64,000 bases of DNA from Mizuhopecten yessoensis (GCF_002113885.1 NW_018408494.1:319316-383315); one strand, 5' to 3'. Counted from the stretch's first letter, positions 1,621 through 53,100 are shown. Translations and numbers: made by a program. Notes: generated by a model from the sequence alone, not told the origin.

Positions 1621-2341
1621 CTTTATTTTTTGATGTTATTCCCTACGTTTGGTACAATCGATTTGGAACATCCATTTTATTTCTCGGATTCCTCACACAA
1701 GAACAAATCTGACATAGTTTTGTTTCTTTCTTCTTCACCATAGTCCCACCATCTTTCAAACAAAAATATGAATGGTTTAAAGGGAGATGTCAAAATGTTT
1801 GGGTTTAAGATTGTTTTGTTGAACTGAAACTGTATTGTGTGTAAGCTAGATTAATCATGTTCTTAGTTTCTTCTCAGTAAGCCTAAAGTATAGGCTTTAC
1901 CTGTATTGTTGTTCAAATGAGACTCTCATTTCAGGCCGTGTTTTAACGTGACTCCTAAGTACTTGCAGCCTTGTCAACATGTTGTAAAATATTATTGCGT
2001 GGATGTACATATAATGTAGATTTATTGTGACAGCTAGATGGAGAGGACAGTACATTGGTCTGTGAGAAAGATAGCTTATTTATGTAAATCATATTGAAAG
2101 GTAACTACATGATGTACATCCTTTTCGCAAGTTAAAGTTATGCACCGTAGTCAGTGATCTGGTCATCTGCAAATAGGCGAATATATGTTGATCCCGAAAA
2201 GGCGATAAAGACCGTCCTAAAGAAACATCGACCATCATATCACCACTAGCACTCTCTGAACATACGTTTGTATAAAAACCATAAATCAATTAGGAACAGC
2301 AACAGTACACAATACAGCATGTACTGTCATGCCAGTTACTT

Positions 2342-2443
2342 AGCCCGAGTTTCCTCTGGCCCTGACACTAGACTTAGCCAATTTGACAGATATGTGTCAT
2401 CTATCTGTCAAAATGTCTTAAGTCTGCAGAGGAAACTCGGGTT
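2342..2443. mobile_element. Short palindromic (hairpin) MITE-like element; related copy at ~4011-4159
   Basis: The ends cccgagtttcctctg and cagaggaaactcggg are inverted repeats, with an internal tgacagata/tatctgtca stem. The copy at 4011 shares agccc..tttcc.ctgg.cctgac..cagacttag and aagtctg..cagaggaaact. Confidence 0.6.
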
Positions 2444-3608
2444 AGACAGTTACTGTAACGTTACGTTTCTATTTACACAAGCAGGCCGGTAGCTGATATA
2501 TGATGTATCACCAAAGTTTTAACTAAAGTACCAATATAATATGTATTTTTATAAATGTTATGGAACATTTTATTACCATCATCCTCAATCTTTATTTTAA
2601 TAAAAGTCATTTTTATATATGTATTATACCCCAAATTGCTATAATTTGTTAGACAGATAATAGGTTGGTAGGGATTGTCCAACCACCTGTTGTCTGTTCT
2701 ACACACAAGTACCACAGTATAAATGTATATCTTATATTGTTACTTAATATCTACAAGAATGACATCATCTTGCTTTATGATATGTACAGTGATACATATA
2801 ACTGATATTTTAATATTACAAGTGGAAACAACATCATGCATAGCCCCACATATATATATTATCAGAAGGAAATCATATTTGCTAATGACAACTCCATCTT
2901 ATACCGTCAAATAAAATAACATCTCATTTTGATGAAATAATATATCATCATCATATTTGACCAATTACAACTTATTCTATTCATATATATATTATTACGA
3001 GAAATTATACCATCTTATATTCATATTATAAGGTCAAATCCTTAGGACCTTTTGTTATCTAAGTAATTAAGATCTATACTAGAGGACCCCATTGGAAATA
3101 AGCTGCCACCCAGCTTTCATGGGATATCCTAGGTTAAAGCTTAGTCAAACAGATACATTGTAATTATAGTGCTCCAAAATTTGTGATATTAACTTTGATG
3201 TGATAAGCTAAATACTGTGATAAATCTGTGATTATTATGCAATTGAAATCTGTGATCATATGTGATATTTGTACCTGTATCTTGCTTTTACCGAATAAAT
3301 ATTATTATTATTATTATTAGATAAATGTAACTCGAGTTCTCAGTGTGAACTTGTCCTCGCACATTTTAAAAGTGCTCTTCTAATATTGATCAAACAATAG
3401 GTTATTTTAAATTAATATTTTAAATATCATATATAAAAAAGGTGCTCACAATAACTGTTATATACCAAAAACTATCCAAAAACGTGCACCTCACCATGTT
3501 TCTTTACAACATTGCTAGGGTAAACATCATTGGATTTTCGTATCTTCCAAACTAAAGAGCTCTCTTTTAGTTACGAATTAACTCCCCTTTTCAGCGAAGA
3601 ATGGAGTG

Positions 3609-6600
3609 ATGGCGATCTTCAGTGTTTACATCATCAACAAAGCCGGTGGTTTGATATACCAATATGACCACTCCGGAGCCAGACCCGAGGTGGAGAAGAC
3701 ATTCAGTTACCCTATTGAACTGGTGCTCAAGATTCACGACGAGAAACTTGTAGTGGCATTTGGAGAAAGAGATGGAATTAAAGGTGGGCGTGCCGATTCG
3801 GTTTCAGCGGTTGAGTTTGGCATCACACATGGATCTGACAATTCATAAGTCATAACAAACAACAAACTATCAGTTTAACTTTTCTCAGAAAGAAACGTTA
3901 ATAGGCGTTTTAGAGTCCACATGTGCATTCATATATACATGTACAATTAGTATCGGGTGCCAGTGGTTGGTACAAACTTTCAAGTACCATAAACGTGTAC
4001 AAATAGTTATAGCCCAAATTTCCACTGGTCCTGACTCCAGACTTAGACATTTTGACAGGCATATGTCTTCACCAGACTAAGAAATGTTGACAGGTAGATG
4101 TATCCATACATCTATCTTTCAAGATGTCTAAGTCTGGTGTAAGGACCAGAGGAAACTTTAATTATTATGTAGTCTCATCTACTCATTTAATAAATGATTG
4201 TTGCAGATTGATATGTTTATAACCAGATGATATTTATTTCGCATTTGTTAGTGGAAAGAAAACAAAATTAATCAACAGCCAAATAAGGATTCAAACCCTG
4301 TGAATCTTTTACCAACTTAGCTTCCTGGTCACTGGCTATCACCCAGTCCTTATATGATACAAAAGGAAAATTCCCTCTAGCTCAAAGCTAGAAGGCGACC
4401 GTGATCCTATGTACAATTAAAATCTGCCACACCTGATTACCAGTACGTCCATACCAATCAACCATATTTTATTTAAGTATTTGTCACCAAACACTCCTAT
4501 TTACAACCTAGATTTGGACTCTCCAAATGAATTAACATTCTACTAGCTGAGCTACAATTCCAACTGCATAAAGACTGGATTATCAAAAATAGCTCTGGGG
4601 TACTAATTAGGATAGGACATCAAGTCTTGGGTACAAGTGCTGGGGTACCAATGCACAGGTTACAAAACTGGAGTACAAGACTGGGGTGTCAAGGCTGAGG
4701 TACCAAGTCTGGGGTACCAAGGCTAGGATATACCAAGGCTAGGATACAAAGACTGAGGTACCAAAGCTAGGGTGCCATGACTAGGGTACCAAGTCTGGGG
4801 TATAAAGGCTAGGGTATCAAGGCTAGGGTACCAAAGCTAGGGTGCCATGACTAGGGTACCAATGCTAGGGTACCAAGTCTGGGGTACCAAGTCGGGGTTA
4901 CCAACGCTAGTTAGGGTACCAAGTCTGGGGTATCAAGGCTAGGGTACCAACTCTGGGGTACCAAGGCTAGGGTACCAACTCTGGGGTACCAAAGCTAGAG
5001 TTCCATGACTTGGGTACCAAGGCTGGGTTATATTACAAAGGCTGGGTGGGGTATCGGTGCAGAGGCTGGAAAACCATTATCATGGTAGGCCAGAAAGCAA
5101 ACTGTGTATATATATATATGGATTCAAAAAGTTTTCCACTTAACAATCAAGCACCATGTCTTATAATAAAGACATCAGTCTTCAATGGTATGTGTTTTAT
5201 AAATTGCAATACTAGTGATAATGTATTTTTTCTTCCACTCCTAATTATTTCAAACTTCAAACAGTATTCGAGATATTTTTAATATGTTATCATATTGATG
5301 CTAATGTTTATTTTCAGTTGGACACACTTTACTGTCAGTAAATGGTGTCCCAGCAGAGGGGCGCTTTTTGAAGAGTGATGGTCGGGACATCATGGATATC
5401 ATTGCTGCAGAAGAAAATTACCCAATTAGTCTCAAGTTTGGACGTACAAAACTGACTACAAATGAGAGAATCATGTTAGCCAGTATGTTTCACTCGTAAG
5501 TAATCTATCAATATATCGCACTACTTAAAAATATGACAGGTTCTGCTCCGAAAGATTTCATCAATACGGAAAGTATATCAAAATTTTCAAGGTGTTAAGT
5601 TTGGTCCAGAGTGACTGAAATAATTGATGGGTAGTAAAACAATGCAAAAACAATTGTAGCCTGTTGTTTTATCTCTGTATACATGTATATAACCTCTTGT
5701 CATATACAATGTAAGTATTTGTACCCTGTTGTTATATGTATTTTTATGCCCCCGCCATAAAATAGGGGGACATTTAGTGTTGCCCATGTCCGTCCCGTCC
5801 CATCGCATCCCGTCACGTCCTGTCCCATCCATGAGCGGGGGCACGGGGGCATTTATGTCTTACAGACATTTTCTAGTTAATATTAAGATATACAGTGTAT
5901 CTATTGGTAATCTATTTTTACTAAAAGATAAATGGTGCTTCATCTCTATTGCTACACGGAGATCCATTCCCTGTATAAATGACAAGTACAGTAAGACTGT
6001 TGACGCATAAAGATAAACTCTCTTTATTTGTAGACTGTTTTCTATATAAACTCTGTGTCTTTGTAGACTGTTTTCTGTATAAACTCTCTGTATTTGGAGA
6101 CTGTTTTCTATATAATCTCTCTATATTTGTAGTCTGTTTTCTATATAAACTTTCTATATTTGTAGACTGCTTTCTATATAAACTCTCTGGATTTTTAGAC
6201 TCTTTGGTAAGCAAACTCTCTGTATTGGTAGACTCTTTGTTATATGAACTCTCTGTATTTGTAGCCTCTTTGTTATATAAACTCTTTATATTTGTAGACT
6301 GTTATTTTATATAAACTCTCTGTATCTGTAGACTCTTTGTTATACAAACTCTATGTATTTTTAGAGTCTTTGTTATATAAACTCTCTTTATTTGTAGATT
6401 GTTTTCTATATAAACTTTCTATATTTGTAGACTGATTTCTATATTAACTCTCTGTATTTGTAGATTGTTTTCTTTCTAACCTCTTTGTATTTATAGACTG
6501 TTTTCTATACAAACTCTCTATATTTGTAGGCTGTTTTCTATATAAACTTTCTATATTTGGAGACTCTTTGTTTTACAAACTCTCTGTATATGTAGACTCT

Positions 6601-9600
6601 TTGTTATACAAACACTCTGTATTTGTAGACTATTTTCTATATAAACTCTGTGTCTTTGTAGACTGTTTTCTGTATAAACTCTCTGTATTTGGAGACTGTT
6701 TTCTATATAGACTCTCTATATTTGTAGTCTGTTTTCTATATAAACGCTCTATATTTGTAGACTATTATTTTATATAAACTCTCTATAATTCTAGACTGTT
6801 TTCTATATTAGCTCTCTGTATTTGTAGACGGTTTTCTATATTAACTCTCTGTATTTGTAGCCTCTTTGTTATATAAACTCTCTGTATCTGTAGACTCTTT
6901 GTTATGCAAACTCTCTGCATTTGTAGAGTCTTTGTTATATAAACTCTCTGTTTTTGTAGACTCTTTGTTATGCAAACTCTCTGCATTTGTAGACTGTTTT
7001 CAATATAAACTCTCTGTATCTGTAGACTCTTTGTTATATAAACTCTCTATAATTCTAGACTGTTTTCTATATGAACTCTCTGTATTTGTAAACTCTTTGT
7101 TATATATACTCTCTGTATTTGTAGCCTCTTTGTTATATAAACTCTTTATATTTGTAGACTGTTATTTTATATAAACTCTCTGTTTTTGTAGACTTTTTTC
7201 TATATAAACTCTCTGGATTTGCAGACTGTTTTCTATATATACTCTCTGTATTTGTAGATTGTTTTCTTTCTAACCTCTTTGTATTTATAGACTGTTTTCT
7301 ATATGAACTCTCTGTATTTGTATACTCTTTGTTATATAAACTCTCTATATTTATAGACTGTTTTCTATGTAAACTCTCTATATTTGTAGGCTGTTTTCTA
7401 TATAAACGCTCTGTAGTTGTAGACTCTTTGTTATGCAAACTCTCTGCATTTGTAGACTGTTTTCCATATAAACTCTCTGTATTTGAAGACTCTTTGTTAT
7501 ACAAACACTCTGTATTTGTAGACTGATTGCTATAGGATCACAACTGTCCCCTGAACCAAGGAGCTCTGGTATAGAAGTACTTGAGACGGATACTTTCAAA
7601 CTCCACTGTTTCCAAACCATGACAGGTTGTAGACTGTTTTCTATTTAAACTCTCTATATTTGAAGACTGTTTTCTATATATACTCTCTGTATTTGTAGAG
7701 TCTTTGTTATATAAACTCTTTATATTTGTAGACTGTTATTTTATATAAACTCTCTATAATTCTAGACTGTTTTCTATATGAACTCTCTGTATTTGTATAC
7801 TCTTTGTTATATAAACTCTCTGTATCTGTAGACTCTTTGTTATGCAAACTCTCTGCATTTGTAGACTGTTTTCTGTATAAACTCTCTATATTCGTAGACT
7901 GTTTTCTATACAAACTCTCTGTATTTGTAAACTCTTTGTTATATATACTCTCTGTATTTGTAGGCTGTTTTCTATATAAACGCTCTATATTTGTAGACTT
8001 TTTTCTATATAAACTCTTTATATTTGTAGACTGTTATTTTATATAAACTCTCTGTATCTGTAGACTCTTTGTTATGCAAACTCTCTGCATTTGTAGACTG
8101 TTTTCTGTATAAACTCTCTATATTCGTAGACTGTTTTCTATATTAGCTCTCTGTATTTGTAGACGGTTTTCTATATTAACTCTCTGTATTTGTAGTCTTT
8201 ATGTTATATAAATTCTCTGTATTTGTAGACCGTTTTCTATATAAACTCGCTGTATTTGTAGACTCTTGGTTATACAAACTCTCTGTATTTGTAAACTCTT
8301 TGTTATATATACTCTCTGTATTTGTAGATTGTTTTCTATATAAACTGGCTGTATTTGTAGACTCTTGGTTATACAAACTCTCTGTATTTGTATACTCTTT
8401 GTTATATAAACTCTCTTTATTTGTAGACTGTATACTATATAAACTATCTGTATTTGTAGACTGATTGCTATAGGATCACAACTGTCCCCTGAACCAAGGA
8501 GCTCTGGTATAGAAGTACTTGAGACGGATACTTCTATATAAACTCTCTTTATTTGTAGATTGTTTTCTATATAAACTCTCTATATTTGTAGACTGTTATT
8601 TTATATAAACTCTCTATATTTATAGACTGTTTTCTATATAAACTCTCTGTATTTGTAGACTCTTTGTTATATAAACTCTCTGTATTTGTAGACTGTTTTC
8701 TATATTAACTCTCTGTATTTGTAGACTGTTTGCTATAGGATCACAACTGTCCCCTGAACCAAGGAGCTCTGGTATAGAAGTACTTGAGACGGATACTTTC
8801 AAACTCCACTGTTTCCAAACCATGACAGGTATGTATATGTTTTTGTATGATTAAACAGTATTCAATGCAAAAAGTGCCCGGGGTGCTTAGCAGTTTTGGG
8901 AAATTAAAATAATTGCAAAACCTTCCAAAATTCTCAGCAAAACAATCTGTCTCAGGTAAATTGGTAAGTTATGGTTAAGGAAGGGATTGTCTATAAGAAT
9001 GCGGGGTAGGGAGGGGCATTTGTGGTGGAAGGGTAGCAAAGTCCTAATCTTATAACTTATAATATAAGCTAAGATACTATTGCTCGACCGGCTTGGCCTT
9101 TGCAACGCATATTTAGTAGCAATCTGTAGCGACAAGTCACTCAGAACTACCAATATGTGCTTGCACGCGAACGCAGTGATGGAGTATACGTAACAGCATA
9201 AGGGCTGTAATACAATACACATACAACAACACTGCCGACGTCCGTTTGCAGCACGTGGTCATCTGTAGCCACTATTAGCGCACAGCCACACAATAGCCAG
9301 CATTTTTTGTAGTTAACGTGGGACTAAGTCCACAATGCTACAAAAAACCAATCTGCCCAAACCGATTAAGAATGGTATCACAAGAAATTCACAAATTAAT
9401 GATTTGTGTACATATAAGCTGAGTTCGCCCCATACGCCAATTACTTGTTGATTAATAAGCTGTGTGATTTAAATATATATTGATTATATGTTTGTATGAT
9501 GATGTAGCCTGTTGATATGTATATATATAATTAAATGTTGTACATAATTTATGTCTCAGTTATTTGTTTAATTTAAAGTATAATATATAATATTGTACAG

Positions 9601-25149: not shown

Positions 25150-28100
25150 CAGACAGAGAGAGAGACAGAGAGATTTCTTAATGGCCAGAGTGAACAGGAA
25201 AAGTTGGATCACCATGATCTTTTACCCGAACGGCTTGAAAGTGATATGAAAATAGTGGGTGTATTTGATAGCAATGATTTGAAAGTAATATGTTTGTCAT
25301 TTGCTAAAAACATGTATTAGATGTGATCCAAAGTGGAATGAAACTATCCACTGATTTCTTAATGAAAAAGTGTATATATAGTATTCAAAGCAGCAAAAAA
25401 AGAGTTTATGTATAGTGTAGCTCTTACAGGAACATGGGTAATAGTTAGGTCAAACATGGTACATGTACTAGTATTACAGTGCACTGAGATATAGCTCCAG
25501 TCCTTACCTGTAGGTGGTGCCCAGGCTCACCCTCATGGAGACTTAAAGCCATCAACTCATAAATTGGCCTAAAAGACAGATTAATCAAGGAGTAGACATA
25601 TTTAATAAAAAAAAGAAAAAAATATTTAAATACATGTATGTGATTACGCATTTCAGATTGTAGTATATCTTCTCAGATAAACACCAGATTCAGGTGTACC
25701 TGGTAATACTTTTAACTTACATCTATTTCTCAGATAAACGTGAGATTTTAAGTGTGGTTATAACCACAATATATATAATTACCTGTATCTTGTAATTAGA
25801 CTTTTTGGATACCTTGATTTACCTGTATCAGGTAATGATCACCAACTTATATCTGTGTCACTGATCTAGTAATATGATATAAACTTTACTTATTATACAA
25901 CAATTATGAAACAAGTTATTAGAGCTTATATTGATCACTCTTGTCGAATGTAAGCACGCAGGAGGACTTAATGTGGGAGGAAACCAGATTACCTGGTTAT
26001 ACCAATACCCTTACGTGTCAGAGAAGTGGGAGGTGTTAACGTAACAGTTATGATACCCTTACGTGTCAGAGAAGTGGGAGGTGTTAACGTAACGGTTATG
26101 ATACCCTTACGTGTCAGAGAAGTGGGAGGTGTTAACGTAACGGTTATGATACACTTACGTGTCAGAGAAGTGGGAGGTGTTAACGTAACGGTTATGATAC
26201 ACTTACGTGTCAGAGAAGTGGGAGGTGTTAACGTAACGGTTATGATACACTTACGTGTCAGAGAAGTGGGAGGTGTTAACGTAACGGTTATGATACACTT
26301 ACGTGTCAGAGAAGTGGGAGGTGTTAACGTAACGGTTATGATACACTTACGTGTCAGAGAAGTGGGAGGTGTTAACGTAACGGTTATGATACACTTACGT
26401 GTCAGAGAAGTGGGAGGTGTTAACGTAACGGTTATGATACACTTACGTGTCAGAGAAGTGGGAGGTGTTAACGTAACGGTTATGATACACTTACGTGTCA
26501 GAGAAGTGGGAGGTGTTAACGTAACGGTTATGATACACTTACGTGTCAGAGAAGTGGGAGGTGTTAACGTAACGGTTATGATACACTTACGTGTCAGAGA
26601 AGTGGGAGGTGTTAACGTAACGGTTATGATACACTTACGTGTCAGAGAAGTGGGAGGTGTTAACGTAACGGTTATGATACACTTACGTGTCAGAGAAGTG
26701 GGAGGTGTTAACGTAACGGTTATGATACACTTACGTGTCAGAGAAGTGGGAGGTGTTAACGTAACGGTTATGATACACTTACGTGTCAGAGAAGTGGGAG
26801 GTGTTAACGTAACGGTTATGATACACTTACGTGTCAGAGAAGTGGGAGGTGTTAACGTAACGGTTATGATACACTTACGTGTCAGAGAAGTGGGAGGTGT
26901 TAACGTAACGGTTATGATACACTTACGTGTCAGAGAAGTGGGAGGTGTTAACGTAACGGTTATGATACACTTACGTGTCAGAGAAGTGGGAGGTGTTAAC
27001 GTAACGGTTATGATACACTTACGTGTCAGAGAAGTGGGAGGTGTTAACGTAACGGTTATGATACACTTACGTGTCAGAGAAGTGGGAGGTGTTAACGTAA
27101 CGGTTATGATACACTTACGTGTCAGAGAAGTGGGAGGTGTTAACGTAACGGTTATGATACACTTACGTGTCAGAGAAGTGGGAGGTGTTAACGTAACGGT
27201 TATGATACACTTACGTGTCAGAGAAGTGGGAGGTGTTAACGTAACGGTTATGATACACTTACGTGTCAGAGAAGTGGGAGGTGTTAACGTAACGGTTATG
27301 ATACACTTACGTGTCAGAGAAGTGGGAGGTGTTAACGTAACGGTTATGATACACTTACGTGTCAGAGAAGTGGGAGGTGTTAACGTAACGGTTATGATAC
27401 ACTTACGTGTCAGAGAAGTGGGAGGTGTTAACGTAACGGTTATGATACACTTACGTGTCAGAGAAGTGGGAGGTGTTAACGTAACGGTTATGATACACTT
27501 ACGTGTCAGAGAAGTGGGAGGTGTTAACGTAACGGTTATGATACACTTACGTGTCAGAGAAGTGGGAGGTGTTAACGTAACGGTTATGATACACTTACGT
27601 GTCAGAGAAGTGGGAGGTGTTAACGTAACGGTTATGATACACTTACGTGTCAGAGAAGTGGGAGGTGTTAACGTAACGGTTATGATACACTTACGTGTCA
27701 GAGAAGTGGGAGGTGTTAACGTAACGGTTATGATACACTTACGTGTCAGAGAAGTGGGAGGTGTTAACGTAACGGTTATGATACACTTACGTGTCAGAGA
27801 AGTGGGAGGTGTTAACGTAACGGTTATGATACACTTACGTGTCAGAGAAGTGGGAGGTGTTAACGTAACGGTTATGATACACTTACGTGTCAGAGAAGTG
27901 GGAGGTGTTAACGTAACGGTTATGATACACTTACGTGTCAGAGAAGTGGGAGGTGTTAACGTAACGGTTATGATACACTTACGTGTCAGAGAAGTGGGAG
28001 GTGTTAACGTAACGGTTATGATACACTTACGTGTCAGAGAAGTGGGAGGTGTTAACGTAACGGTTATGATACACTTACGTGTCAGAGAAGTGGGAGGTGT

Positions 28101-31100
28101 TAACGTAACGGTTATGATACACTTACGTGTCAGAGAAGTGGGAGGTGTTAACGTAACGGTTATGATACACTTACGTGTCAGAGAAGTGGGAGGTGTTAAC
28201 GTAACGGTTATGATACACTTACGTGTCAGAGAAGTGGGAGGTGTTAACGTAACGGTTATGATACACTTACGTGTCAGAGAAGTGGGAGGTGTTAACGTAA
28301 CGGTTATGATACACTTACGTGTCAGAGAAGTGGGAGGTGTTAACGTAACGGTTATGATACACTTACGTGTCAGAGAAGTGGGAGGTGTTAACGTAACGGT
28401 TATGATACACTTACGTGTCAGAGAAGTGGGAGGTGTTAACGTAACGGTTATGATACACTTACGTGTCAGAGAAGTGGGAGGTGTTAACGTAACGGTTATG
28501 ATACACTTACGTGTCAGAGAAGTGGGAGGTGTTAACGTAACGGTTATGATACACTTACGTGTCAGAGAAGTGGGAGGTGTTAACGTAACGGTTATGATAC
28601 ACTTACGTGTCAGAGAAGTGGGAGGTGTTAACGTAACGGTTATGATACACTTACGTGTCAGAGAAGTGGGAGGTGTTAACGTAACGGTTATGATACACTT
28701 ACGTGTCAGAGAAGTGGGAGGTGTTAACGTTCGTTATGATACACTTACGTGTCAGAGAAGTGGGAGGTGTTAACGTAATAGATTCCTGGTCTCGATCCAT
28801 CGTTTGTACCAGCCATGTAGAACCCCACAGGTGCTGAGCTCATAGAGGCAGGAGCGGCTGTAATCCTGTTTAAAACATTCAACACTTCAATAATAGAGAA
28901 GTTGTGTTGTAAAGTTTAGCAGCTATGCAAGATTGAGACTCTGTTAGGAATGTAACAATACAAAATCTATCAAATTATTGATGTATTGTGTAAATAGTTG
29001 CCTCAGTAGAAATACATTGATAGTATACTTTATTATTTAACAGACATAATAAATCAATATAGGTGCAATAAGAATGAATATTTCTGATCAACCCATCTTC
29101 AAACTTTCCTCAATTTTTTTATCCATGAAGTTTAATTTTACATGAATTGACAGTTTTCTGATCAGAGTCAGATTTAATCTATTAATTTTCAAATAATTTT
29201 AACTTTTCATTTAAATTTTTAATAAAGAAAACAAGAAACATCAGCATTTGGCAAAACAGGTGTTGGCCAACTGTTAATGACGAGTTTGACCTTAGTAACA
29301 GGTTCAATTTTTATTTATGACCTTGACCTTTAATAAGTATCAGGGTCAATTGTTACCAATGACCTTGACCTTAGTACTGTAGTCATTGACTGGTTACTGA
29401 AGACCTTTATCGTTGTATTTAAGTCATGATATTTTAATTCAATGATATCAATATATGATGACCTTGACCTCTACAGATGCACTCATGATGTTACTTACTT
29501 CATATCAACATCGGGGATAGTTTTGAACAGCTTGGAGAGTTTGGGTCGGATTTTATTTGTACAGATATCTTTAATTCCAGCCAAAAGATCTTCCTGAATT
29601 AAAGATAAAGAATTGTAGCTGTTGTAAACATCAAAGATAGGTTACAGACCACAAACTATACTGCTACTTACAACGAAGAAATAAACACTACACAGCTCCA
29701 ATCATGTTTGCTTGGTTAAAACTAATGGTAAAAATAATATTGAAATAAAACTTTCAAGTGATATATTTTCTGATATTCATTAATGTCCCTATAATTAGAC
29801 TGCATTTATGGGTTTTATAGCCTGAATAAGCACAGACTTCTTAATGGGTTCACACTAAAACAAAATCTGTATCACAAGGAAATCTGTTGAACATATTTCA
29901 TTGCATGTATATATTTATTTTCAGTAAACATTTTAATAATTGGGGCATGTTAATAAACAGCAAAATATTGCAGTCAATTTTAAATAAAGGATCATAATTT
30001 GCAAATGAATTACCTCAGTTTGATAGTATAACTCCTTGTTGTCTTTGGCATGTCTTAGGAAGCGTTGTATATTTGACCCCAGTCCTTCCTCTTTTGCTAT
30101 TTGTTCCATGGCTTTTGTAATTCTTTCAACCTCTTGTAGACCAAGGTTGTGGACCTCTTGAGGTGTCAGATTTGTTGATGTATGGAACATTAGACACTGT
30201 TGGTAATATCTTTGGCCGTTAGGAAGGGTACAACACCCTATACTGGGTCTCGTCCTCCTCATATACACCTGCATATACAGGTAAACAAAATGTTAGACAC
30301 GGTTGGTGGTAGTTATAGTAGTGTGGGAGGGTACAACACCCTATACTGAGTCTCGTCCTCCTCATACACACCTGTATATACAGGTAAACAAAATGTTAGA
30401 CACTGCTGTGGTAGTTTTAGCAGTGAGGGAGGGTACAACACCCTATACTGGGTCTCGTCCTCCTCATATACACCTGCATATACAGGGGAACAAAATGTTA
30501 GACACTCCTGTGGTAGTTATAGTAGTGAGGGAGGGTACACCACCCTATACTGGGTCTCGTCCTCCTAATATACACCTGTATATACAGGGGAACAAAATGT
30601 TAGACACTCCTGTGGTAGTTATAGTAGTGAGGGAGGGTACAACACCCTATACTGGGTCTCGTCGTCCTCATACACACCTGTATATACAGGTGAACAAAAT
30701 GTTAGACACTGCTGTGGTAGTTATAGTAGTGAGGGAGGGTACACCACCCTATACTGGGTCTCGTCCTCCTCATATACACCTGTATATACAGGGGAACAAA
30801 ATGTTAGACACTGCTGTGGTAGTTATAGTAGTGAGGGAGGGTACAACACCCTATACTGGGTTTCGTCTTCCTAATATACACCTGTATATACAAGTAAACA
30901 AAATAGTATACAGCTCTGCAAGTAGTTACAGCAGTGAGGGAGTGTACAACACCTGTAGTTATCAACTTCTATATAAGGATAGCAACAAAAGTTAAATTAC
31001 TTACAGACATAAGATAATCCCGAAGATCAATAAAAGCAGGGATGACAGTATCCTCTAGTACAGATATAGCTTCTTTCTCCAACTCGGCCCTAAAGATAAA

Positions 31101-41152: not shown

Positions 41153-44100
41153 TCAGTACACAGTCAGGTTTTTCATGATGACAACATCGGAGCCGCGAGG
41201 ATTCTTGCCCCTTGGCTGCCAGGATGGGACATCACTGCCGTAGTTGGGAGCCCAGTAATAATGGCGGCGGATCTGATTACTGAGTTCACACAGCTTAGTA
41301 ACACCATCCACAACATAGGCTTGTATATCAGTGTTCTCTGGCTTCAACCGTCCACTCTCCAGCAAACTGGCAAAGGCCTGGAAAACAAACAACAGTATCA
41401 ATTAATCTGGGTATCTCATTAATATCCTCTTTCAAATTCATTAAAATCAGCCAAATATTATTCACTGTTGTGGGAAAAAAAATACCGGTAGCATAACTCA
41501 CTCATGTTGAAATAACAAAACAGCAAATATGAAATCTTATCCAGATTTAGATTTTCTGTGCTATATTATATATAGCATGCTTGCCAACGCTCCCTATTTA
41601 GATGGAAGACTCCTGATTTTGGACCCTGAAATTTAATGTTGCCAGCCAGTGAATTTGCTGGACTATTCCTATATTCTAAGATATAATAATTTCATCTGAA
41701 AGAACAACTCAAAGTATGTCATTTTAATCTAAATGGTTATTTTGTCCCTAAGGGTATATAGACACATTTTATTTATGTTTTTAATTGGGAGCACACAGAA
41801 TCTCCCCCATGAAAATCTCAAAAGTAGTTAAGTAGGTTACTGTACATGATCATCTACACTGTAAGTTGGTGTACAATGTTGACTTTTGTTAATGACACAG
41901 CAACAACTTACAATACAGGCAGGTTCTTCCAGCTTGTTTCCCCAGATGAATATACTGGTAAGGGTTGTGTTGGTCTTCATGGCGTCGGCCAGGGCACACA
42001 GGCCCTTGTTTCCAATGCCATTACTTGCCACCACCAAACTACAGATGTACATTGAATACATAAGGATGGTTCACAATCAAATAATTCCACAAGTTATTTC
42101 AAACCAATGAATTAAAATATTATTCCACAAAAGGTAAATTGTCTGTGTATCAGTACAGTCACCCTAGATACTCCAGGGGTAACCGTTACGCTCACTTTCG
42201 CTCTCTGCACCCCTGGAATATGATAACCAAATTGAAGGCATGCAGCTTGCTATTTGATTGTTCTCGGGTAAAAGAAAACCTGACCAATTGCTAAACCAGT
42301 CACTTTTACCGTTACGCGACCGGCAGATTCTTCTGATGTACATCAAAGGATCAAACTAGCCTTCTCGTCTCACCTACAAGATGATGCACACTGCACTAGT
42401 CTTCTCGTCTCACCTACAAGGTGATGCACACTGCACTAGTCTTCTCGTTCCACCTACAAGATGATGCACACTGCACTAGTCTTCTCGTCTCACCTACAAC
42501 ATGATGCACACTGCACTAGTCTTCTCGTCTCACCGACAACATGATGCACACTGCACTAGTCTTCTCGTCTCACCAACAAGGTGATGCACACTGCGCCTTT
42601 TATTTTGCCATGACATATTCTAGGGTTGCAGAGAGTGAAAGTCACACTGCACTAGTCTTCTCGTCTCACTTACAAGGTGATGCACACTGCACTAGTCTTC
42701 TCGTTCCACCTACAAGATGATGCACACTGCACTAGTCTTCTAGTCTCACCTACAAGGTGATGCACACTGCACTAGTATTCTCGTCTCACCTACAAGATTA
42801 CACACTGCACTAGGGTTCTCGTCTCACCTAGAAGATTACACACTGCACTAGTCTTCTCGTCTCACCCACAAGATTACGCACTGCACTAGTCTTCTCGTCT
42901 CACCTACAAGGGGATGCACACTGCACTAGTCTTCTCGTCTCACTTACAAGGCGATGCACACTGCACTAGTCTTCTCGTTCCACCTACAAGATGATTCACA
43001 CTGCACTAGTCTTCTCGTCTCACCTACAAGATGAGGCACACTGCACTAGTCTTCTCGGCCCACCTACAAGGTGATGCACACTGCACTAGTCTTCGCGTCT
43101 CACCTACAAGATTACACACTGCACTAGTCTTCTCGTCTCACCCACAAGATTACGCACTGCACTAGTCTTCTCGTCTCACCTACAAGATTACACACTGCAC
43201 TAGTCTTCTCGTCTCACCCACAAGGTGATGCACACTGCACTAGTCTTCTCGTCTCCCCTACAAGATGATGCACACTGCACTAGTCTTCTCGTCTCGCCTA
43301 CAAGGTGATGCACACTGCACTAGTCTTCTCGTTCCACCTACAAGATGATGCACACTGCACTAGGCTTCTCGTCTCACCTACAAGGTGATGCACACTGAAC
43401 TAGTCTTCTCGTCTCCCCTACAAGGTGATGCACACTGCACTAGTCTTCTCGTTCCACCTACAAGATGATTCACACTGCACTAGTCTTCTCGTCTCACCTA
43501 CAACATGATGCACACTGCACTAGTCTTCTCGTCTCACCAACAAGGTGATGCACACTGCGCCTTTTATTTTGCCATGACATATTCTAGGGTTGCAGAGAGT
43601 GAAAGTCACACTGCACTAGTCTTCTCGTCTCACTTACAAGGCGATGCACACTGCACTAGTCTTCTCGTTCCACCTACAAGATGATTCACACTGCACTAGT
43701 CTTCTCGTCTCACCTACAAGCTGATGCACACTGCACTAGTCTTCTCGTCTCACCAACAAGGTGATGCACACTGCGCCTTTTATTTTGCCATGACATATTC
43801 TAGGGTTGCAGAGAGTGAAAGTCACACTGCACTAGTCTTCTCGTCTCACTTACAAGGCGATGCACACTGCACTAGTCTTCTCGTCTCACTTACAAGGCGA
43901 TGCACACTGCACTAGTCTTCTCGTTCCACCTACAAGATGATTCACACTGCACTAGTCTTCTCGTCTCACCTACAACATGATGCACACTGCACTAGTCTTC
44001 TCGTCTCACCTATAAGGTGATGCACACTGCACTAGTCTTCTCGTCTCCCCTACAAGATGATGCACACTGCACTAGTCTTCTCGTCTCACCTACAAGGTGA

Positions 44101-47100
44101 TGCACACTGCGCCTTTTATTTTGCCATGACATATTCTAGGGTTGCAGAGAGTGAAAGTGATCTTAAACCTGGAGTAGTGAGGATGATGTACAGTAAAAAA
44201 CCTGTCTAATTGGTGCCTGAATATTTGAACATCTCGTCATATCGTATATGATATATATTGATAATACTTAGTCTAGTGTAGTGTTTGGAGTTCTGGCCTC
44301 TGTCAAATAAAACACCCAGATAATACTTACGTCTCTAGTGTAGTGTTATAGGTGGCTATAGCCTCTGCCAAGTGCATAGCACCATCATCTTCCAGTCTGT
44401 TGAACCCTAGATCAAGGATTTTGATGGATGTGTTGTTCTTCAAAACTTTGGCAAGTTCTTTTGTCCCATCTCGGGTGATTCTATTGCTATAAAAAAAAAC
44501 CAGTTCTAACAAAAGTGATCAATAAAACAAAGTTCAAATAAAGAATATTTTTTTAGAAAAGTAAATTATGCCACAAAGAAGTTTGGAATGTCTTTCAAAT
44601 GATTTTGAGAAATTTCAGTGAGAAGTCAAAACATAAATTTCATCATGAAGGGCTCACCAGCTGAGATCTAGATAGTTGAAAGTCATATTAGCCATCAAAT
44701 TTTCAGCCAATCGTGTCGCTCCAAAATCTCTCATATCATATTTCTGTAGATGGAGTTCTTCTATTGATGTATTCACCTGGAAAGATATGAAAAATACAGA
44801 CACAGATATGTAGGCATTATGCTCTAAAAGGCAGTGTAACATGAAGTATGCTAACGTTATAACAGCCATTTTAATTATCACTTTATTTAAATGTGAGGTA
44901 AACAGTCTTTTAAGATTCTAAACAGTCGAAGAATTGGAAAGAATACAAGAGTGAAGTCAAAACGTTTCGTCATAATCAGTAATAAGACATACTGGTCAAG
45001 AGCAATGAAACCTATAAGAGGTTATAGGAGATAACGGGGGTGAGGAAATCTCCAATGGTTACGGAGGGAGTGAGGAAACCTATAAGAGGTTATAGGAGAT
45101 AACAGGGGTGAGGAAATCTCCAATGGTTACGGAAGGAGTGAGGAAACCTATAGAGGTTATAGGAGATAACGGGGGTGAGGAAATCTCCAATGGTTACGGA
45201 GGAGTGAGGAAATCTATAGAGGTTATAGGAGATAACAGGGGTGAGGAAATCTCCAATGGTTACGGAAGGAGTGAGGAAACCTATAGAGGTTATAGGAGAT
45301 AAAAGGGGTGAGGAAATCTCCAATGGTTACGGAGGAGTGAGGAAATCTATAGAGATTATAGGAGATAACAGGGGTGAGGAAATCTCCAATGGTTACGGAG
45401 GGAGTGAGGAAACCTATAGTGGTTAAGGGAGAAGACAGCTGTAATGAAATCTATGGGGTTCTTATAAAAGAACATCTAATATCCACTTCTAATTAAAATT
45501 CCTTGCAGTCAATATAAGACAATGATTTCTTACTTTGAGCATCTTAGCAAAGTGGACAGTTGTCTCCTCCTGACAGCTGAAAATGAGGGGTCTGTTTACA
45601 TTGAGTGCCTTCAGGGTACTGTTTCTGAAGAGTACTGTGGGGAGTGCAATAACTGCTTCAATCGTCTGAAACACAAAGATCAGAAGTATGATTTGATTAT
45701 CGTATGTTACAAGATCATCCGCAAAAAAATCATAGCCTCAAACAAGATTACAGCACACTATCAATATTTTATACACTAAGATACAAAGAACAATACCTTA
45801 TTATTTATGTTTTTGATACATTATCATAAAATCACACATAGTATTATACAGAGGTAATGGTGGTGTTGTGGTTACTGTGAATGGAATTTCTCCATTTGAA
45901 AAAGTAATGAAAATTGTCTTTATTCGTTGTTAATGTTTCATCTTGCATATTAAATCAATAAACATAATATTCATCATCACACTAGTTACTAGAGTATGTT
46001 GATACGAAAATTTGAAATATGTCATTATTGTACCATGTCTTACATTCTATATAATTATATACACACAGCAAATTTTAAATTTTGGATCAACAACAAACTC
46101 ACAATATATGGTACCAAGTTACTTTGGCAAAATACCGGTGACTCAATCCAATACACATTGCCGAAACACTATGCTTGGAGGTAAAAACAAAACAATAATA
46201 AATTGACTTCTTTATTTATAATTAATATTTAAAGTGGTTTCAATACCAGGTATAATTCAAACATTATCTGCTTAATTCCTCAGAGAAAATTAAAAAAAAG
46301 ACGGGTCTTGGGACTCTATACTATTCAACACATCTCCAGTCTCACCAGGTCTAGAGCCTCTACTATTTGATACTTACCATGTCGGTATCTCCCAGGTCTA
46401 GAGCCTCTTCTATTTGATACTTACCATGCCGGTATCACCCAGGTCTAGAGCATCTACTATTTGATACTTCCCATGTCGGTATCACCCTGGTCTAGAGCCT
46501 CTACTATTTGAAATTTACCATGTCGGTATCACCCTGGTCTAGAGCCTCTACTATTTGATACTTACCATGTCGGTATCACCCAGGTCTAGAGTCTCTAAGA
46601 TTTGATACTTACCATGTCAGTATCACCCAGGTCTAGAGCCTCTACTATTTGATACTTACCATGTCGGTATCACCCAGGTCTAGAGCCTCTAAGATTTTGT
46701 TTACTTGTAACATCTGGGCAAAACACATTCCTCCTCTGTTCCCAATCTTGTTTCCATTTAATCTCAGCACTCGCAAACTCTCATTTTTCTGAAGACAAAA
46801 ACAGCAATGGTAGCCATACAAAATTAAACTTTCGTACATATGGCATCTACACACCATACTTCACATACAAAATTAAACTTTTGTACATATGGCATCTACA
46901 CACCATACTTCACATACAAAACAATCCTATCTTTCAACTTATGGATTAATTTCTCCACTTAATACATATTGCATGGATTAATTTCTCCACTTAATACATA
47001 TTGCATGGATTAATTTCTCCACTTAATACATATTGCATGGATTAATTTCTCCACTTAATACATATTGCATGGATTAATTTCTCCACTTAATACATATTGC

Positions 47101-50100
47101 ATGGATTAATTTCTCCACTTAATACATATTGCATGGATTAATTTCTCCACTTAATACATATTGCATGGATTAATTTCTCCACTTAATACATATTGCATGG
47201 ATTAATTTCTCCACTTAATACATATTGCATGGATTAATTTCTCCACTTAATACATATTGCATGGATTAATTTCTCCACTTAATACATATTGCATGGATTA
47301 ATTTCTCCACTTAATACATATTGCATGGATTAATTTCTCCACTTAATACATATTGCATGGATTAATTTCTCCACTTAATACATATTGCATGGATTAATTT
47401 CTCCACTTAATACATATTGCAAGAATAAAACCTTTTTTGGATAAAAATCTCTGTAGAACTATTTATATGTCGGAGTATATACACATTTTATCAAAGTGTA
47501 GAGAGAATTGCATAAATTGTGGTTTCTTTTGCAGAGTTGAGCAATGGTTGGATGCATCAAAGAGGCATTTGTTAGATCTCTATACAAATACCTAGAGTAT
47601 AACATAGAAAATATATAACAACATTATGGTAATATTACAGCAACAACAGTCTAATGTATAATAACAGTATAATGTATAATAACAGTATAATGTATAATTA
47701 CAGTATAATAACAGTCTAATGTATAACAACAGTATAATGTATAATTACAGTATAATGTATAATAACAGTATAATGTTTAATTACAGTATAATGTATAATA
47801 ACAGTATTATGTATAATAACAGTATAATGTATAATTACAGTATAACGTATAATAAAAGTATAATGTATAACAACAGTATAATGTATAATTACAGTATAAT
47901 GTATAATAACAGTATAATGTAATAATGTATAATTACAGTATAATGTATAATTACAGTATAATGTATAATTACAGTATAATATATAATTACAGTATAAGGG
48001 CAGTATGAATGCAGTAAAAGTACAGTATAATGTATAATTACAGTATAATGTATAATTACAGTATAATGTATAATTACAGTGTAAGTGCAGTATGAATGCA
48101 GCGAAAGTACAGTATAATGTATAATTACAGTATTATACAGTATAATGTATAATTACAGTATTATACAGTATAATGTATAATAACAGTATAATGTATAGCT
48201 ACAGTATAATGTATAATTACAGTATAATGTATAATTACAGTATAATGTATAATTACAGTTTAAAGTATAATTACAGTTTAATGTATAATTACAGTATAAG
48301 TGCAGTAGGAATGCATTATAAGACTAAGTATGTTTGATATGTGGTATGACTATTTTGTAGTATAGGTTATTTATAAATACTAAGTACATACATGTAAGGC
48401 CTTGGCGATTGCCTCCGCTCCCTCCGACTCAATGTCATTACACATCAGATTCAAATACTTCAGAGTCACCGTCTCCTACAAGCAAATATAATAAAGACAA
48501 TAAAAAACTGTATTACTCCAGGTAACTCTTAAAACTGTATTGCTCCAGGTAACTCTTGAAACTGTATTACTCCAGGTAACTCTTGAAACTGTATTACTCC
48601 AGGTAACTCTTAAAACTGTATTACTCCAGGTAACTCTTCTACAAGGATCTTGGTGGCAAAGTATGAAAGCAGTCAAAATATATACAAGGTAGAACTATAT
48701 CTCACAAGGTAGATTTATTATATATATTAGTCTTATCCCATCATCAGGTGAATTTACTCTCCTCACCAACCTCTGCAATTTGGCAATAAGTTCAGTCTTT
48801 ATTACAGATGAGGTGTGTTTAATTTGCCTTCATTATAGGAGTGACCTACCTCGTTGGTGCTATTAGTCCATTTTTCAATTTTTATTTTTTTATTTTTTTA
48901 AATAACCCAAAAAGTACCTGTGCTTTATACACTAGCGTGCACAATACGCAAATATTTACGGTATTACTAAATCAACAGGTAGATTTTCTTCATGTCTTAT
49001 CCAATCATCAGGTGAATTTACTCCTCACAGATCTCAAGCAATTTGGTGACAAGTTTAGTCTTTATTACAGATGAGATGTGACTTACCTCGAGCAGTTTTG
49101 CAATATGTTTTGCACCCACACTTGTGAGGTTATTGTAGCGGAGGTCCAGACCGTCGACGTATGTATTGTTACACAGAGTTTTATACAGAGCCTCTGCATC
49201 ACTGTCCACCAGACGTTTGTCCGTCAGCAGCTTGTTGTTCCCGGCCAGGTACAGGTCCATAGACTCCTTAAATTCACTGTAATTTACAATCATCATTATT
49301 ATAAGTCACAGTAGACTTTTACAAGATACCATAGAGCTTACATGTGACTTAATGTAACAAATTGCTATAACACACAGTCATCAACATACAATTTTGCTGG
49401 AATTGATTCCAACTTACTATCATGTGGCTTTACACTAGAAATGGCATAACTAGCATGTACATAGGTTTAAAAGGTAATATACTGTAATACAAATCAATCT
49501 CATTTTAATGAAAACTGAATGGCAAATTATGAATTAGGGATACATTATACTAACAGGAATGATATGGATATAAATTTAATGAATTTTAATAATATTGTAT
49601 GACTAGTGAGTAGCTATCAGCCTAACTATATGTAATTAGAATAATTTTGAGTTAATTTATGAGATCCAAACTTATTACAGGAATCAAATATTTTTAATAA
49701 TCGCAAATCTGTCAGAAAACAAATGCAGGTTCGAGATTGTTCACATTCGGAAAGAGCTGAATTTTAACAGGATGTTGATCACAAAGATATTATTTAGAGG
49801 ACAAAAGATATACAATTGTGAGGAAAAGGAATGTAATGTTTAGGGTGCATTTATGCACAGAAGTTGTAAATAGAGTGACATGTATCAGGACAACACAGAA
49901 CAGACATCAGGTAAAGTCGGTCAGTTACTGTAAGTGGCAATGGTGACAGGAGACTGAAAGAGCAGCACAAGAAAATCTAAAATGGGAATTGCTCAAAATA
50001 CAAATTCTTTAAAACCTGTTTTCTCTTAAATTGTGGGCTATCTAAACATTTTACAATGTTTGAATTAATCCTGTCTTTGTAATGTGTACATAAGGGTCAG

Positions 50101-53100
50101 AGTGCACTTTTTTGCTGTCTTGCAATGATCAATACATAAAGGCAAATGCATTTTTCCTGTTATACAATGTGTACATAAAGGCCAGTGAACTTTTCCAGTC
50201 TTGCAATGTGTACATACAGGCCAGTGAACTTTTCCAGTTTGGCAGTGAGTATATAAAGGTCAGTGCACTATTCCACTCTGGCAGTGAGTACATAAAGGTC
50301 AGTGCACTTTTTCAGTCTTGCAGTGAGTACATAAAGGTCAGTGCACTTTTTCAGTCTGGCAGTGAGTACATAAAGGCCAGTGAACTTTTCCAGTCTGGCA
50401 GTGAGAACATAAAGGCCAGTGAACTTTTCCAGTCTGGCAGTGAGTACGTAAAGGCCAGTACACTATTCCACTCTGACAGTGAGTATATAAAGGTCAGTTA
50501 ACTTTTCCAGCCTGGCAGTGAGTACATAAAAGCCAGTGCCTCTTGCCAGTCTGGTAGTGAGTACATAAAGGTCAGTGCACTTTTCCAGTCTGGCAGTGAG
50601 TACATAAAAGCCAGTGCCCATTGCCAGGCTGGCAGTGAGTACATAAAGGTCAGCGCACTATTCCAGTCTGACAGTGAGTATATTAAGGTCAGTGCACTTT
50701 TCCAGTTTGGCAGTGAGTACATAAAGGTCAGTGCGCTATTCCAGTCTGTCAGTGAGTATATTAAGGTCAGTGCACTTTTCCAGTTTGGCAGTCAGTATAT
50801 AAAGGTCAGTGCACTATTCCAGTTTGGCAGTGAGTATATAAAGGTCAGTGCACTTTTCCAGTTTGGCAGTGAGTACATAGATCAGTGCACTATTCCAGTC
50901 TGTCAGTGAGTATATAAAGGTCAGTGCACTTTTCCAGTTTGGCAGTGAGTACATAAAGGTCAGTGCACTATTCCAGTCTGTCAGTGAGTATATTAAGGTC
51001 AGTGCACTTTTCCAGTTTGGCAGTCAGTATATAAAGGTCAGTGCACTATTCCAGTCTGGCAGTGAGTATATAAAGGTCAGTGCACTATTCCACTCTGGCA
51101 GTGAGTATGTAAAGGTCAGTGCACTATTCCAGTTTGGCAGTGAGTACATAAGGGTCAGTGCACTTTTCCAGTCTGGCAGTGAGTACATAAAGGTCAGTGC
51201 ACTTTTCCAGTTTGGCAGTGAGTATATAAAGGTCAGTGCACTATTCCAGTCTGGCAGTGAGTACATAAAGGCCAGTGAACTTTTCCAGTCTGGCAGTGAG
51301 TACATAAAGGCCAGTTTTTAAAGGAGGTGGGGGGGTGTTTAAACCATGTCATTAAAGACTACCATAAGTACTAGTCATTAACACTATCACAAGAAATTCT
51401 ACATGTACTGGATACCTATAAGCCTAAGGGATTTTGGTTAATACTGAATCTGATGGGTACCTATAGAATGGTATTAGTATAATACATATTACATATATAT
51501 ACTTGTATGTTTCAGCTTGATATTTTCGTTACTTTTATGAAGTTTTATCACACTTGTAGAGGAAGGGGAGATAACTGAAGGTTTGGTCCAGTGTGACTAC
51601 TACTGGGTATATGTTACAGTTTCAATATGAATACCACTTGGTATGTGTCACAATAGGAAGGGCAGAGATTAGGGAAAGCTGGGACAACAGGCAATCAAAA
51701 TGGCCTAATTATAACATTTGAGAAATTCAATGCAGATTTTTAACTTAACTCATGGTCAATTGAAATAGTTGAAAACTTGGAAATGGTGCATATAGCGTTT
51801 AAAACATTTAAAATCACTGGAAGGGTAAAGGTTTCAGTATAAACACCAATGGGGATATATGTCACTGTAGGAAGGGTGGAGTATAACACTGTGTCTCAGA
51901 CACATGGTTGAGAAGAATAGTTCTAGGTTTAATGGTTTCACCAAGATTAATAATGTTTCAAGGGCAAGTAGGTTTCCATGCCATTGCTAATGTTAATGTT
52001 TTAGTCACTCGGAACCCAGTGTGGTGCATCTTGCTCATTTTTTTCAGAAGTTAAGACTTTGGTAAATATGAACGGGGAAGCTTGAGTGTGTGAGGGGAAC
52101 ATGTTTTATTTCCCCATCATGAGATCAATAAAATCCAAACAGACATGCTGTTATAAAGATGAGATATAATAGTAATTATCATGATAAAACTAATAGGTTA
52201 GGCAGCAACATATCACATCTAGTGACTAGTTATCAATGGTGGAAGCACTTGTACTAGAACTTATAAGTTACACTGGACTCTATCCAGTTAACAATCAATT
52301 TTAATTAAAACTACATGTATCATTGATCTAAAACTAACACAGTAATCATGTTTTACACTGCCCTTTCTTGTGTTTCTACTTGAAAGTGTTTAAGATCCCC
52401 AATGCAGTTTACACCTGCAGTGTTTCTTCAATCATCAACAAAATGCAACTCATGCAGTTTTTGTGACATGCTGTTAGAGAGAAGACAGACTATTAATGAG
52501 GAGCTACAAAGGAAAGTGTGTTAACAGTTGAAAACAAACACTAAACTTCGTGTCAATAGTGTGTAATGGAACATGCTCATACCATCCTAAAACCTGGACC
52601 AAATATTACCACCAAAATATAAAATACAAAAATAAAGCCAATCATCAGTGTTTACCTTGATTCCGTCCCCGTATAAACAATTACAGGATAAAAGATACAT
52701 TTAATGGCCATAACATTGATTATAGAAGCTATACTTTTGGTCCAGGTTTTGTAACAGAGTATAAACTCATAGAGTGATATTTTTTGTAAATACTTACCCT
52801 TTTTTCTTTAGTCTGTTTTGTATTGAAAACGTGAAGGGTTGTTTATAGGTGAATGTTATTCAATCATGAGTGAATTAAAACCAAAACAAATCATACAAAC
52901 CACACTGCTAAATAATCAAGTGATACAGTTATGTTCAAACTTGGTTCATGCAAAATAAGGTATATGTTAGAACTTTGTTTTTTGAAATCTTTCAGTGAAC
53001 ACAAACTTGAAGTGTTTTAATTATTATGGATGTGAATTAAACTTATTAAAAGTATTACATGTGTATTGTATTATGGATAATGTAAGGTTGAGGAAACATT

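What the first reader, a model, noticed from the sequence alone, without database searches (positions are those of the whole stretch)
26005..28778. 57 near-identical decoy 5' splice sites behind DUF885 exon 10
One real donor (CAC|GTAAGT at 28749/28748) is followed by 54 copies with essentially the same 30-nt exon end and GTAAGT, then 3 distal copies with GTAAGG. Together they occupy ~2.75 of the 3.18-kb intron. U1 base-pairing cannot tell them apart, yet any downstream choice reads ACG TAA and truncates the protein just before the HEGEPGHH motif. Variation is confined to the array edges (a 46-bp unit next to the exon; ccc variants distally), suggesting very recent expansion or active homogenisation. 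It is a natural test of first-come or exon-definition donor choice, and possibly a U1 sink.
Basis: partly seen in the sequence, partly recalled or inferred. Interest (0 to 1): 0.82.

Follow-up and report, generated by a model that had tools for sequence, protein, structure and literature searches.

The report
Splice-donor minisatellite in scallop DUF885 intron
An intron of a scallop gene opens with about 57 tandem copies of its own exon end and splice donor, but RNA reads use only the first copy; this kind of repeat is already known from amphioxus ("mirages") and from human genes such as F7.

Summary
On the minus strand, exon 10 (28749-28864) ends CAC|GTAAGT. A 48-bp array (26005-28778) follows, made of the last 30 nt of the exon plus the first 18 nt of the intron. 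It holds 58 donors: the real one, 54 GTAAGT copies and 3 distal GTAAGG copies.

Raw RNA reads from two runs join the first donor to exon 11 (124 reads). Essentially none run into the array, so the decoys are silent in steady-state RNA.

- The copy number and the perfect uniformity come from a short-read draft assembly. That assembly also holds an unplaced 6.2-kb scaffold of variant units of the same repeat. "Variation only at the edges" therefore cannot be trusted.
- Repeat words are tens of times more abundant than flanking words in independent runs, so the array really has tens of copies.
- The kind is published: amphioxus "mirages", and human F7, IFI6 (25 pseudo-sites), CBS, LMNB2 and PDGF. 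The donor-choice experiment was done on F7 in 2006.
- This scan has noted the same kind about 39 times on other DNA of this genome.

Verdict: a real, large, new member of a known kind, and most likely a tolerated by-product of a minisatellite-rich genome.

The parts
28749..28864 (-).
   Evidence: RNA joints 28864<-29498 and loose ends at 28748. Pfam DUF885 profile 321-352. Translation.
28743..28751 (-). Authentic 5' splice site CAC|GTAAGT (8 of 9 matches to the consensus CAG|GTAAGT); the cut is between 28749 and 28748
   Evidence: 64 (X23) + 45 + 15 (X24) raw RNA reads and one 1553-nt RNA contig (X17) continue from here into the start of exon 11.
26005..28778 (-). 48-bp minisatellite whose unit is the last 30 nt of the exon plus the first 18 nt of the intron; 57.8 copies in the assembly
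28703..28748 (-). First intronic unit, 46 bp (proximal edge variant)
26111..28702 (-). 54 identical 48-bp units, each with a silent copy of CAC|GTAAGT. The uniformity may be an idealisation by the assembly.
   Evidence: RNA depth about 0; caveat.
26005..26110 (-). Distal edge: two 48-bp units and a partial third, all with GTAAGG (7 of 9 matches). The last runs into unique intron after a 3-nt indel.
25569..26004 (-). Unique tail of the intron with polypyrimidine tract and acceptor ...cttttag|G
25508..25568 (-). Next exon (61 nt) encoding PIYELMALSLHEGEPGHHLQ, the putative metal-binding motif of DUF885
   Evidence: The loose-end consensus of the RNA reads equals 25538-25567.
28750..28750 (-). 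Expressed variant A>T at donor position -2 (Thr>Ser codon; site becomes CTC|GTAAGT). It is still spliced at the first donor.
   Evidence: 15 reads in X24 with a loose end at 28751 whose consensus differs by this one letter.
29498..29592 (-). Upstream exon (95 nt) of the same gene
   Evidence: RNA joints.
30013..30268 (-). Upstream exon (256 nt). Its acceptor lies in the last unit of a second, 102-bp junction array (30221-30953).

Best explanation
This is a splice-donor-spanning minisatellite (a 'mirage'). A 48-bp piece covering the last 30 nt of a DUF885 exon and the first 18 nt of the old intron behind it was duplicated in tandem. It was then amplified to tens of copies by slippage or unequal exchange (inferred). 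Each unit carries a copy of the 5' splice site. The spliceosome uses only the most upstream copy, the one next to the real exon with its real acceptor 116 nt upstream (shown for steady-state RNA). The reason is inferred: 5'-to-3' scanning or exon definition, as shown experimentally for human F7. The copies are silent passengers. Any use of them would give a stop codon and probably decay of the message. The array is most likely a tolerated by-product of a very minisatellite-rich genome and has no function of its own. Its exact length and its uniformity in this draft assembly are unreliable.
For: Anatomy. The exon part is ancestral coding sequence: it matches the DUF885 profile. A paralogue on contig C661 has the same intron position and phase and no repeat within 1.5 kb on either side. 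The unit is locus-specific and is found nowhere else in the 988-Mb genome except the unplaced scaffold C1308.

RNA: exon depth is about 90x. 64 + 60 reads leave the exon at 28749 into exon 11. Depth in the array is 0 in X23 and about 2 reads in X24. No loose ends of 3 or more reads lie at donors 2-9. The 5 reads at 28318 have only about 31 letters on the shared 30-nt exon end, so their placement is ambiguous.

Tens of copies are real. In DNA run X2 the flank contig stops at 28751, where the repeat begins, and summed array word depth is about 660-7200 against 68-88 in the flanks. In RNA run X17 the array words are at 148-250 against 3.9 for a unique intron.

The window is about 21% minisatellite, with some 16 arrays.
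Against: Steady-state RNA cannot exclude decoy use followed by nonsense-mediated decay. Earlier notes of this scan report more junction arrays than chance predicts in this genome. If that holds, it hints at a bias or a use that a purely neutral account does not explain; I did not test it. No orthologue from another species could be fetched, so the age and the ancestral donor (GTAAGG or GTAAGT) are open.
Confidence: 0.8

Rival explanations
1. Assembly artefact: the real locus has only a few units, and gap filling of a short-read draft blew them up into 54 identical copies.
For: The draft has 82,659 contigs. The 54 units are perfectly identical, whereas most other arrays in the window show 74-92% matches. 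A leftover scaffold consists of variant units with N gaps.
Against: In an independent DNA run, array words are roughly 10-100 times more abundant than flanking single-copy words. In an RNA run they are about 25-60 times a unique intron. The leftover scaffold suggests more repeat, not less.
Confidence: 0.06
2. Expression rheostat: a share of transcripts is spliced at decoy donors, gains the TAA stop and is destroyed, so that array length sets the output of the gene.
For: All 54 decoys are as good as the real site (8 of 9 matches). Every decoy choice gives a stop. In human IFI6 and CBS the first two pseudo-sites are used.
Against: No read runs from the exon into unit 1, and there are no decoy-to-exon-11 reads with an unambiguous anchor among more than 120 junction reads. 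In F7 the pseudo-sites do not compete at all.
Confidence: 0.08
3. Local U1 platform: 57 strong U1 sites in the intron hold U1 snRNP on the nascent RNA. They would protect it from premature cleavage or change splicing kinetics, or act as a U1 sink.
For: Only the sequence itself: 57 sites with 7-8 of 9 consensus matches.
Against: Nothing measured bears on it. As a cell-wide sink, the sites of one moderately expressed gene are negligible against the abundance of U1 (general knowledge). The paralogue does without it. There is no conserved RNA family or special fold.
Confidence: 0.04

Closest known systems
Human F7 intron 7 minisatellite (37-bp VNTR, 5-9 repeats; Borensztajn et al. 2006, PMC1557585)
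   Same: The first unit spans the exon-intron boundary. The authentic donor is followed by identical pseudo-sites, and only the most upstream site is used.
   Different: Here there are about 57 pseudo-sites instead of 4-8. The unit holds 30 nt of exon rather than 4. The sites are strong (GTAAGT) rather than weak (gugggu). No mutational test has been done here.
Amphioxus 'mirages' (Adh3, globins BflGb6/9, TnC, PGBD5; PMC3087553, PMC3902484)
   Same: Minisatellite-like tandem duplications of exon-intron boundaries in a marine invertebrate. They occur at donors and at acceptors, do not disturb splicing, and their edge units escape homogenisation.
   Different: Different phylum (a mollusc by earlier notes of this scan). 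Copy number is much higher than the 2-6 units described for the globins.
Human IFI6 (6-16) intron 2, CBS intron 13, LMNB2 and PDGF intron 4 minisatellites (as reviewed in PMC1557585)
   Same: The splice donor is repeated 10-25 times behind the authentic one.
   Different: In IFI6 and CBS the two nearest pseudo-sites are used constitutively. Here no such use was seen in over 120 junction reads.
Intron gain by tandem duplication of an AGGT segment (Rogers model, cited in PMC3087553)
   Same: Tandem duplication creates spare splice signals.
   Different: No new intron is made here. The intron position and phase are shared with a paralogue that has no repeat.

Membership tests
Splice-junction minisatellite ('mirage', F7 IVS7 type) | Head-to-tail array of a unit of about 10-160 bp | tested here: met
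   Period 48, 57.8 copies, 99% matches.
Splice-junction minisatellite ('mirage', F7 IVS7 type) | The first unit spans a real exon-intron boundary, so the splice site is repeated in the intron | tested here: met
   The unit is 30 nt of exon plus 18 nt of intron. The boundary at 28749|28748 is proven by RNA reads.
Splice-junction minisatellite ('mirage', F7 IVS7 type) | Normal splicing uses the authentic site and the pseudo-sites stay silent | tested here: met
   124 reads use the first donor, array depth is about 0, and no decoy loose ends have an unambiguous anchor. This holds for steady-state RNA only.
Splice-junction minisatellite ('mirage', F7 IVS7 type) | Copy number varies between alleles or animals (VNTR behaviour) | tested here: inconclusive
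   There are variant units on a leftover scaffold and in another animal's contigs. No array length was measured.
Splice-junction minisatellite ('mirage', F7 IVS7 type) | Pseudo-sites are functional once the authentic site is disabled | not testable with these tools
   This needs a minigene or a natural mutant.
DUF885 (PF05960), family of the host gene | Match to the Pfam profile and the HExxPGHH motif | tested here: met
   Searched exon by exon. The exon at 30013-30268 scores 65.6 bits (cut-off 32.4). Exons 10 and 11 give collinear sub-threshold hits at profile positions 321-352 and 358-376. The motif HEGEPGHH is in exon 11.
Intron gain by tandem duplication (Rogers model) | The duplication creates an intron that was not there before | tested here: not met
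   The paralogue on C661 has an intron at the same codon and phase without any repeat.
Dispersed satellite or transposon-borne repeat | Copies at many loci of the genome | tested here: not met
   Found only at this locus and on the unplaced scaffold C1308, which is made of the same repeat.

The most novel reading that the evidence does not exclude
The array is not neutral. Either decoy-donor use followed by decay tunes DUF885 output by array length, or scallop genomes have a mutational process that seeds minisatellites preferentially at splice junctions.
Probability: 0.08. Interest if true: 0.6.

Novelty: new member of a known kind. Interest (0 to 1): 0.25.

Why it matters
With about 57 strong, identical pseudo-donors this is, as far as the papers read here go, the largest natural array of competing 5' splice sites; the largest cited there is IFI6 with 25. 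The RNA shows clean choice of the first one. It is therefore a good natural substrate for asking how far upstream-first donor choice holds, but the principle and the kind of repeat are already published. The practical lesson concerns annotation. Gene predictors and short-read assemblers will mishandle such introns, and perfect uniformity of a repeat in a draft assembly should not be read as biology.

Tried and rejected
Following the tool's own advice I laid the exon plus the first nine units instead. Donors 11-58 and the distal junction were therefore not examined directly, and no DNA depth from raw reads was available.
- A word search with the exon-10 ORF found nothing. Given the length filter, this says nothing about relatives. 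As a result no orthologous intron from another species could be fetched.
- I did not use the large profile search, because the protein family is not in doubt.
All protein searches were done exon by exon, by reference.
- The 915-aa open frame on the plus strand of the array is an artefact of the repeat, with no Pfam family.
- There is no Rfam family in 25300-29100.
- The RNA fold of the exon end plus four units is no more stable than shuffles (z = +1.4), so masking of the decoys by structure is rejected.
- Allelic imbalance as a sign of decay was rejected. Variant shares differ from site to site (12-45%), which suggests pooled animals.
- Searches failed on frame or term syntax.

Full report
**What is there.** On the minus strand the window holds a multi-exon gene of the DUF885 family.
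- Searched exon by exon, the exon at 30013-30268 scores 65.6 bits against PF05960 (cut-off 32.4).
- The two exons around the finding give collinear weaker hits, at profile positions 321-352 and 358-376.
I did not verify the numbering.
- The next exon is 25508-25568 and encodes PIYELMALSLHEGEPGHHLQ. The intron is 25569-28748, 3180 nt.

**The array.** TRF reports a 48-bp repeat at 26005-28778 with 57.8 copies and 99% matches.
- The unit is the last 30 nt of the exon plus the first 18 nt of the intron.
- A count of the donor motif gives 58 sites: the first at 28749|28748, then a 46-bp unit, then 54 identical 48-bp units (26111-28702).
- After these come two units with GTAAGG, one of which carries a further change, and a last GTAAGG copy at 26014. 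That copy passes into unique intron after a 3-nt indel.
- Reading through any donor gives ACG TAA.

**Which part is ancestral.** The exon end is ordinary DUF885 coding sequence.
- A paralogue on contig C661 has an intron at the same codon and phase (…TCA CA|GTATGT) and no tandem repeat within 1.5 kb on either side.
- The intron is therefore old, and the array is a later, locus-specific addition copied from the junction. It is neither an intron gain nor an inserted satellite.
- In the whole 988-Mb genome the unit occurs only here and on one unplaced scaffold.

**How far the assembly can be trusted.** The genome is a draft of 82,659 contigs.
- Earlier notes of this scan call it the Yesso scallop. 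From memory the figures fit that published short-read assembly; I did not test the name.
- Scaffold C1308 (6.2 kb) consists only of this repeat, in three islands separated by N runs, which I left alone.
- Nearly all of its roughly 13 units differ from the consensus at 1-4 places. Several changes recur: position 31 C>A five times, the GTAAGG change three times, and GTTAGT twice.
- Such variants are absent from the 54 identical units of the main scaffold. A short-read assembler can anchor only the units next to unique sequence, and it fills the interior with the majority unit.
- "Variation confined to the edges" is therefore what the method would give in any case, and it is not evidence for recent expansion.

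**Reads.** I laid 28290-30300, which covers exons 8-10 and the first nine intronic units, with two raw RNA runs, one RNA contig run and one independent DNA contig run.

RNA results:
- Exon 10 is covered about 90-fold in each raw run.
- 64 reads (X23) and 45 reads (X24) leave the exon at 28749/28748. Their loose ends agree with each other almost perfectly (agreement 1 and 0.99), and the consensus equals 25538-25567, the start of exon 11.
- 15 further reads in X24 do the same but carry a single variant at 28750.
- A 1553-nt contig of X17 joins exons 8, 9 and 10 and leaves exon 10 at the same point, into the start of exon 11.
- Depth inside the array is nil in X23 and about two reads in X24. No loose ends of three or more reads lie at donors 2-9.
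- Five reads placed at donor 10 (28318) have only about 31 letters on the stretch. That is the 30-nt exon end shared by all units, so they are ordinary exon 10-11 reads with an ambiguous place.
- In steady-state RNA the first donor is therefore used, and the copies are not. Decoy products destroyed by nonsense-mediated decay would escape this test.

**Copy number.** Contig word depths are not copy numbers, but they speak against "only a few units".
- In the independent DNA run X2 the flank contig stops at 28751, just where the repeat begins. Summed array word depth is about 660-7200 in the bins where array contigs were placed, against 68-88 in the flanks.
- In X17 a 77-nt array contig stands at 148 against 3.9 for a unique intron piece.
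- Both fit tens of copies.
- X2 also has array contigs with 2-5 differences at about single-copy depth. These are variant units, though some may be the distal GTAAGG units.

**Mechanism.** 54 of the 57 copies match the real site exactly from -30 to +16, with 8 of 9 matches to the consensus. The distal three have 7 of 9.
- Nothing in the RNA fold sets the first apart (z = +1.4).
- What differs is the upstream context: only the first donor lies 116 nt behind a real acceptor.
- The best-supported account, by inference from the F7 work, is 5'-to-3' choice of the first functional donor behind the exon, or exon definition. [quoted passage not shown]
- The origin by tandem duplication and unequal exchange is inferred from the anatomy.

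**Comparison with what is known.**
- Tandem repeats that span an exon-intron boundary were named "mirages" in amphioxus Adh3. They were then found in its globin, TnC and PGBD5 genes, at donors and at acceptors, without aberrant mRNA.
- In humans, F7 (5-9 units), IFI6 (25 pseudo-sites), CBS (15-20), LMNB2 (10-15) and PDGF (16-18) have such arrays. F7 was used with 50 constructs to test donor choice.
- The present array meets the defining features that could be tested and exceeds those examples in copy number.
- It is a new member of a known kind.
- This scan has about 39 notes of the same kind on other DNA of this genome.

**Context in the window.** About 16 minisatellites cover roughly a fifth of the 64 kb.
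- Of the six junctions verified by RNA in the stretch laid, two lie in such arrays: this donor, and the acceptor of exon 8 at 30268, which sits in the last unit of a 102-bp array. There too, only the exon-proximal copy is used.
- I did not test whether junction arrays exceed chance in this genome. Earlier notes give answers ranging from "as expected" to tenfold.

**Verdict.** The claims about homogeneity rest on an assembly that cannot show it. A function as a rheostat or a U1 platform is not excluded but has no support.

Noticed in passing
window 30221-30953 (minus-strand gene): A 102-bp array (7.2 copies, 92% matches) ends inside exon 8. RNA reads place the acceptor at 30268, in the last unit, joined to an exon ending at 31005. 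No depth lies further into the array, so only the exon-proximal acceptor copy is used.
   Followed up: partly
G000 contig C1308 (L009:1-6201): An unplaced 6.2-kb scaffold consists only of variant copies of the same 48-bp unit, in three islands separated by N runs of 3748 and 1836. It is probably leftover repeat reads or the other haplotype of this array.
   Followed up: partly
window 28750: An expressed variant at donor position -2 (A>T on the gene strand, Thr>Ser) occurs in 15 of 60 junction reads of run X24. This weaker first donor (7 of 9 matches) is still the one spliced to exon 11.
   Followed up: partly
window 28856, 29513, 30041, 30086, 30218: Expressed single-letter variants occur at shares of 12-45% that differ from site to site within one run. 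This suggests pooled animals or more than two haplotypes in the RNA runs.
   Followed up: no
window 28864/28865 to 29498/29500: The exon 9-10 joint appears in two forms of similar count. One has a single replaced letter at the junction, most likely an allelic variant at the exon edge rather than alternative splicing.
   Followed up: no
window 46941-47421: A 32-bp array has 15 copies at 100% identity. This is a second perfectly uniform repeat in a window where most arrays show 74-92% matches, and it may likewise be idealised by the assembly.
   Followed up: no
window 6013-8737, 42355-44110, 46345-46691, 50133-51315, 62697-63911: Further large minisatellites with periods of 33-47 bp. I did not check those exon boundaries.
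   Followed up: no
G000 contig C661:328550-328633 (L011:1501-1584, minus): A DUF885 paralogue exon (54% identity over 28 residues) has the same intron position and phase, donor GTATGT, and no tandem repeat nearby.
   Followed up: yes
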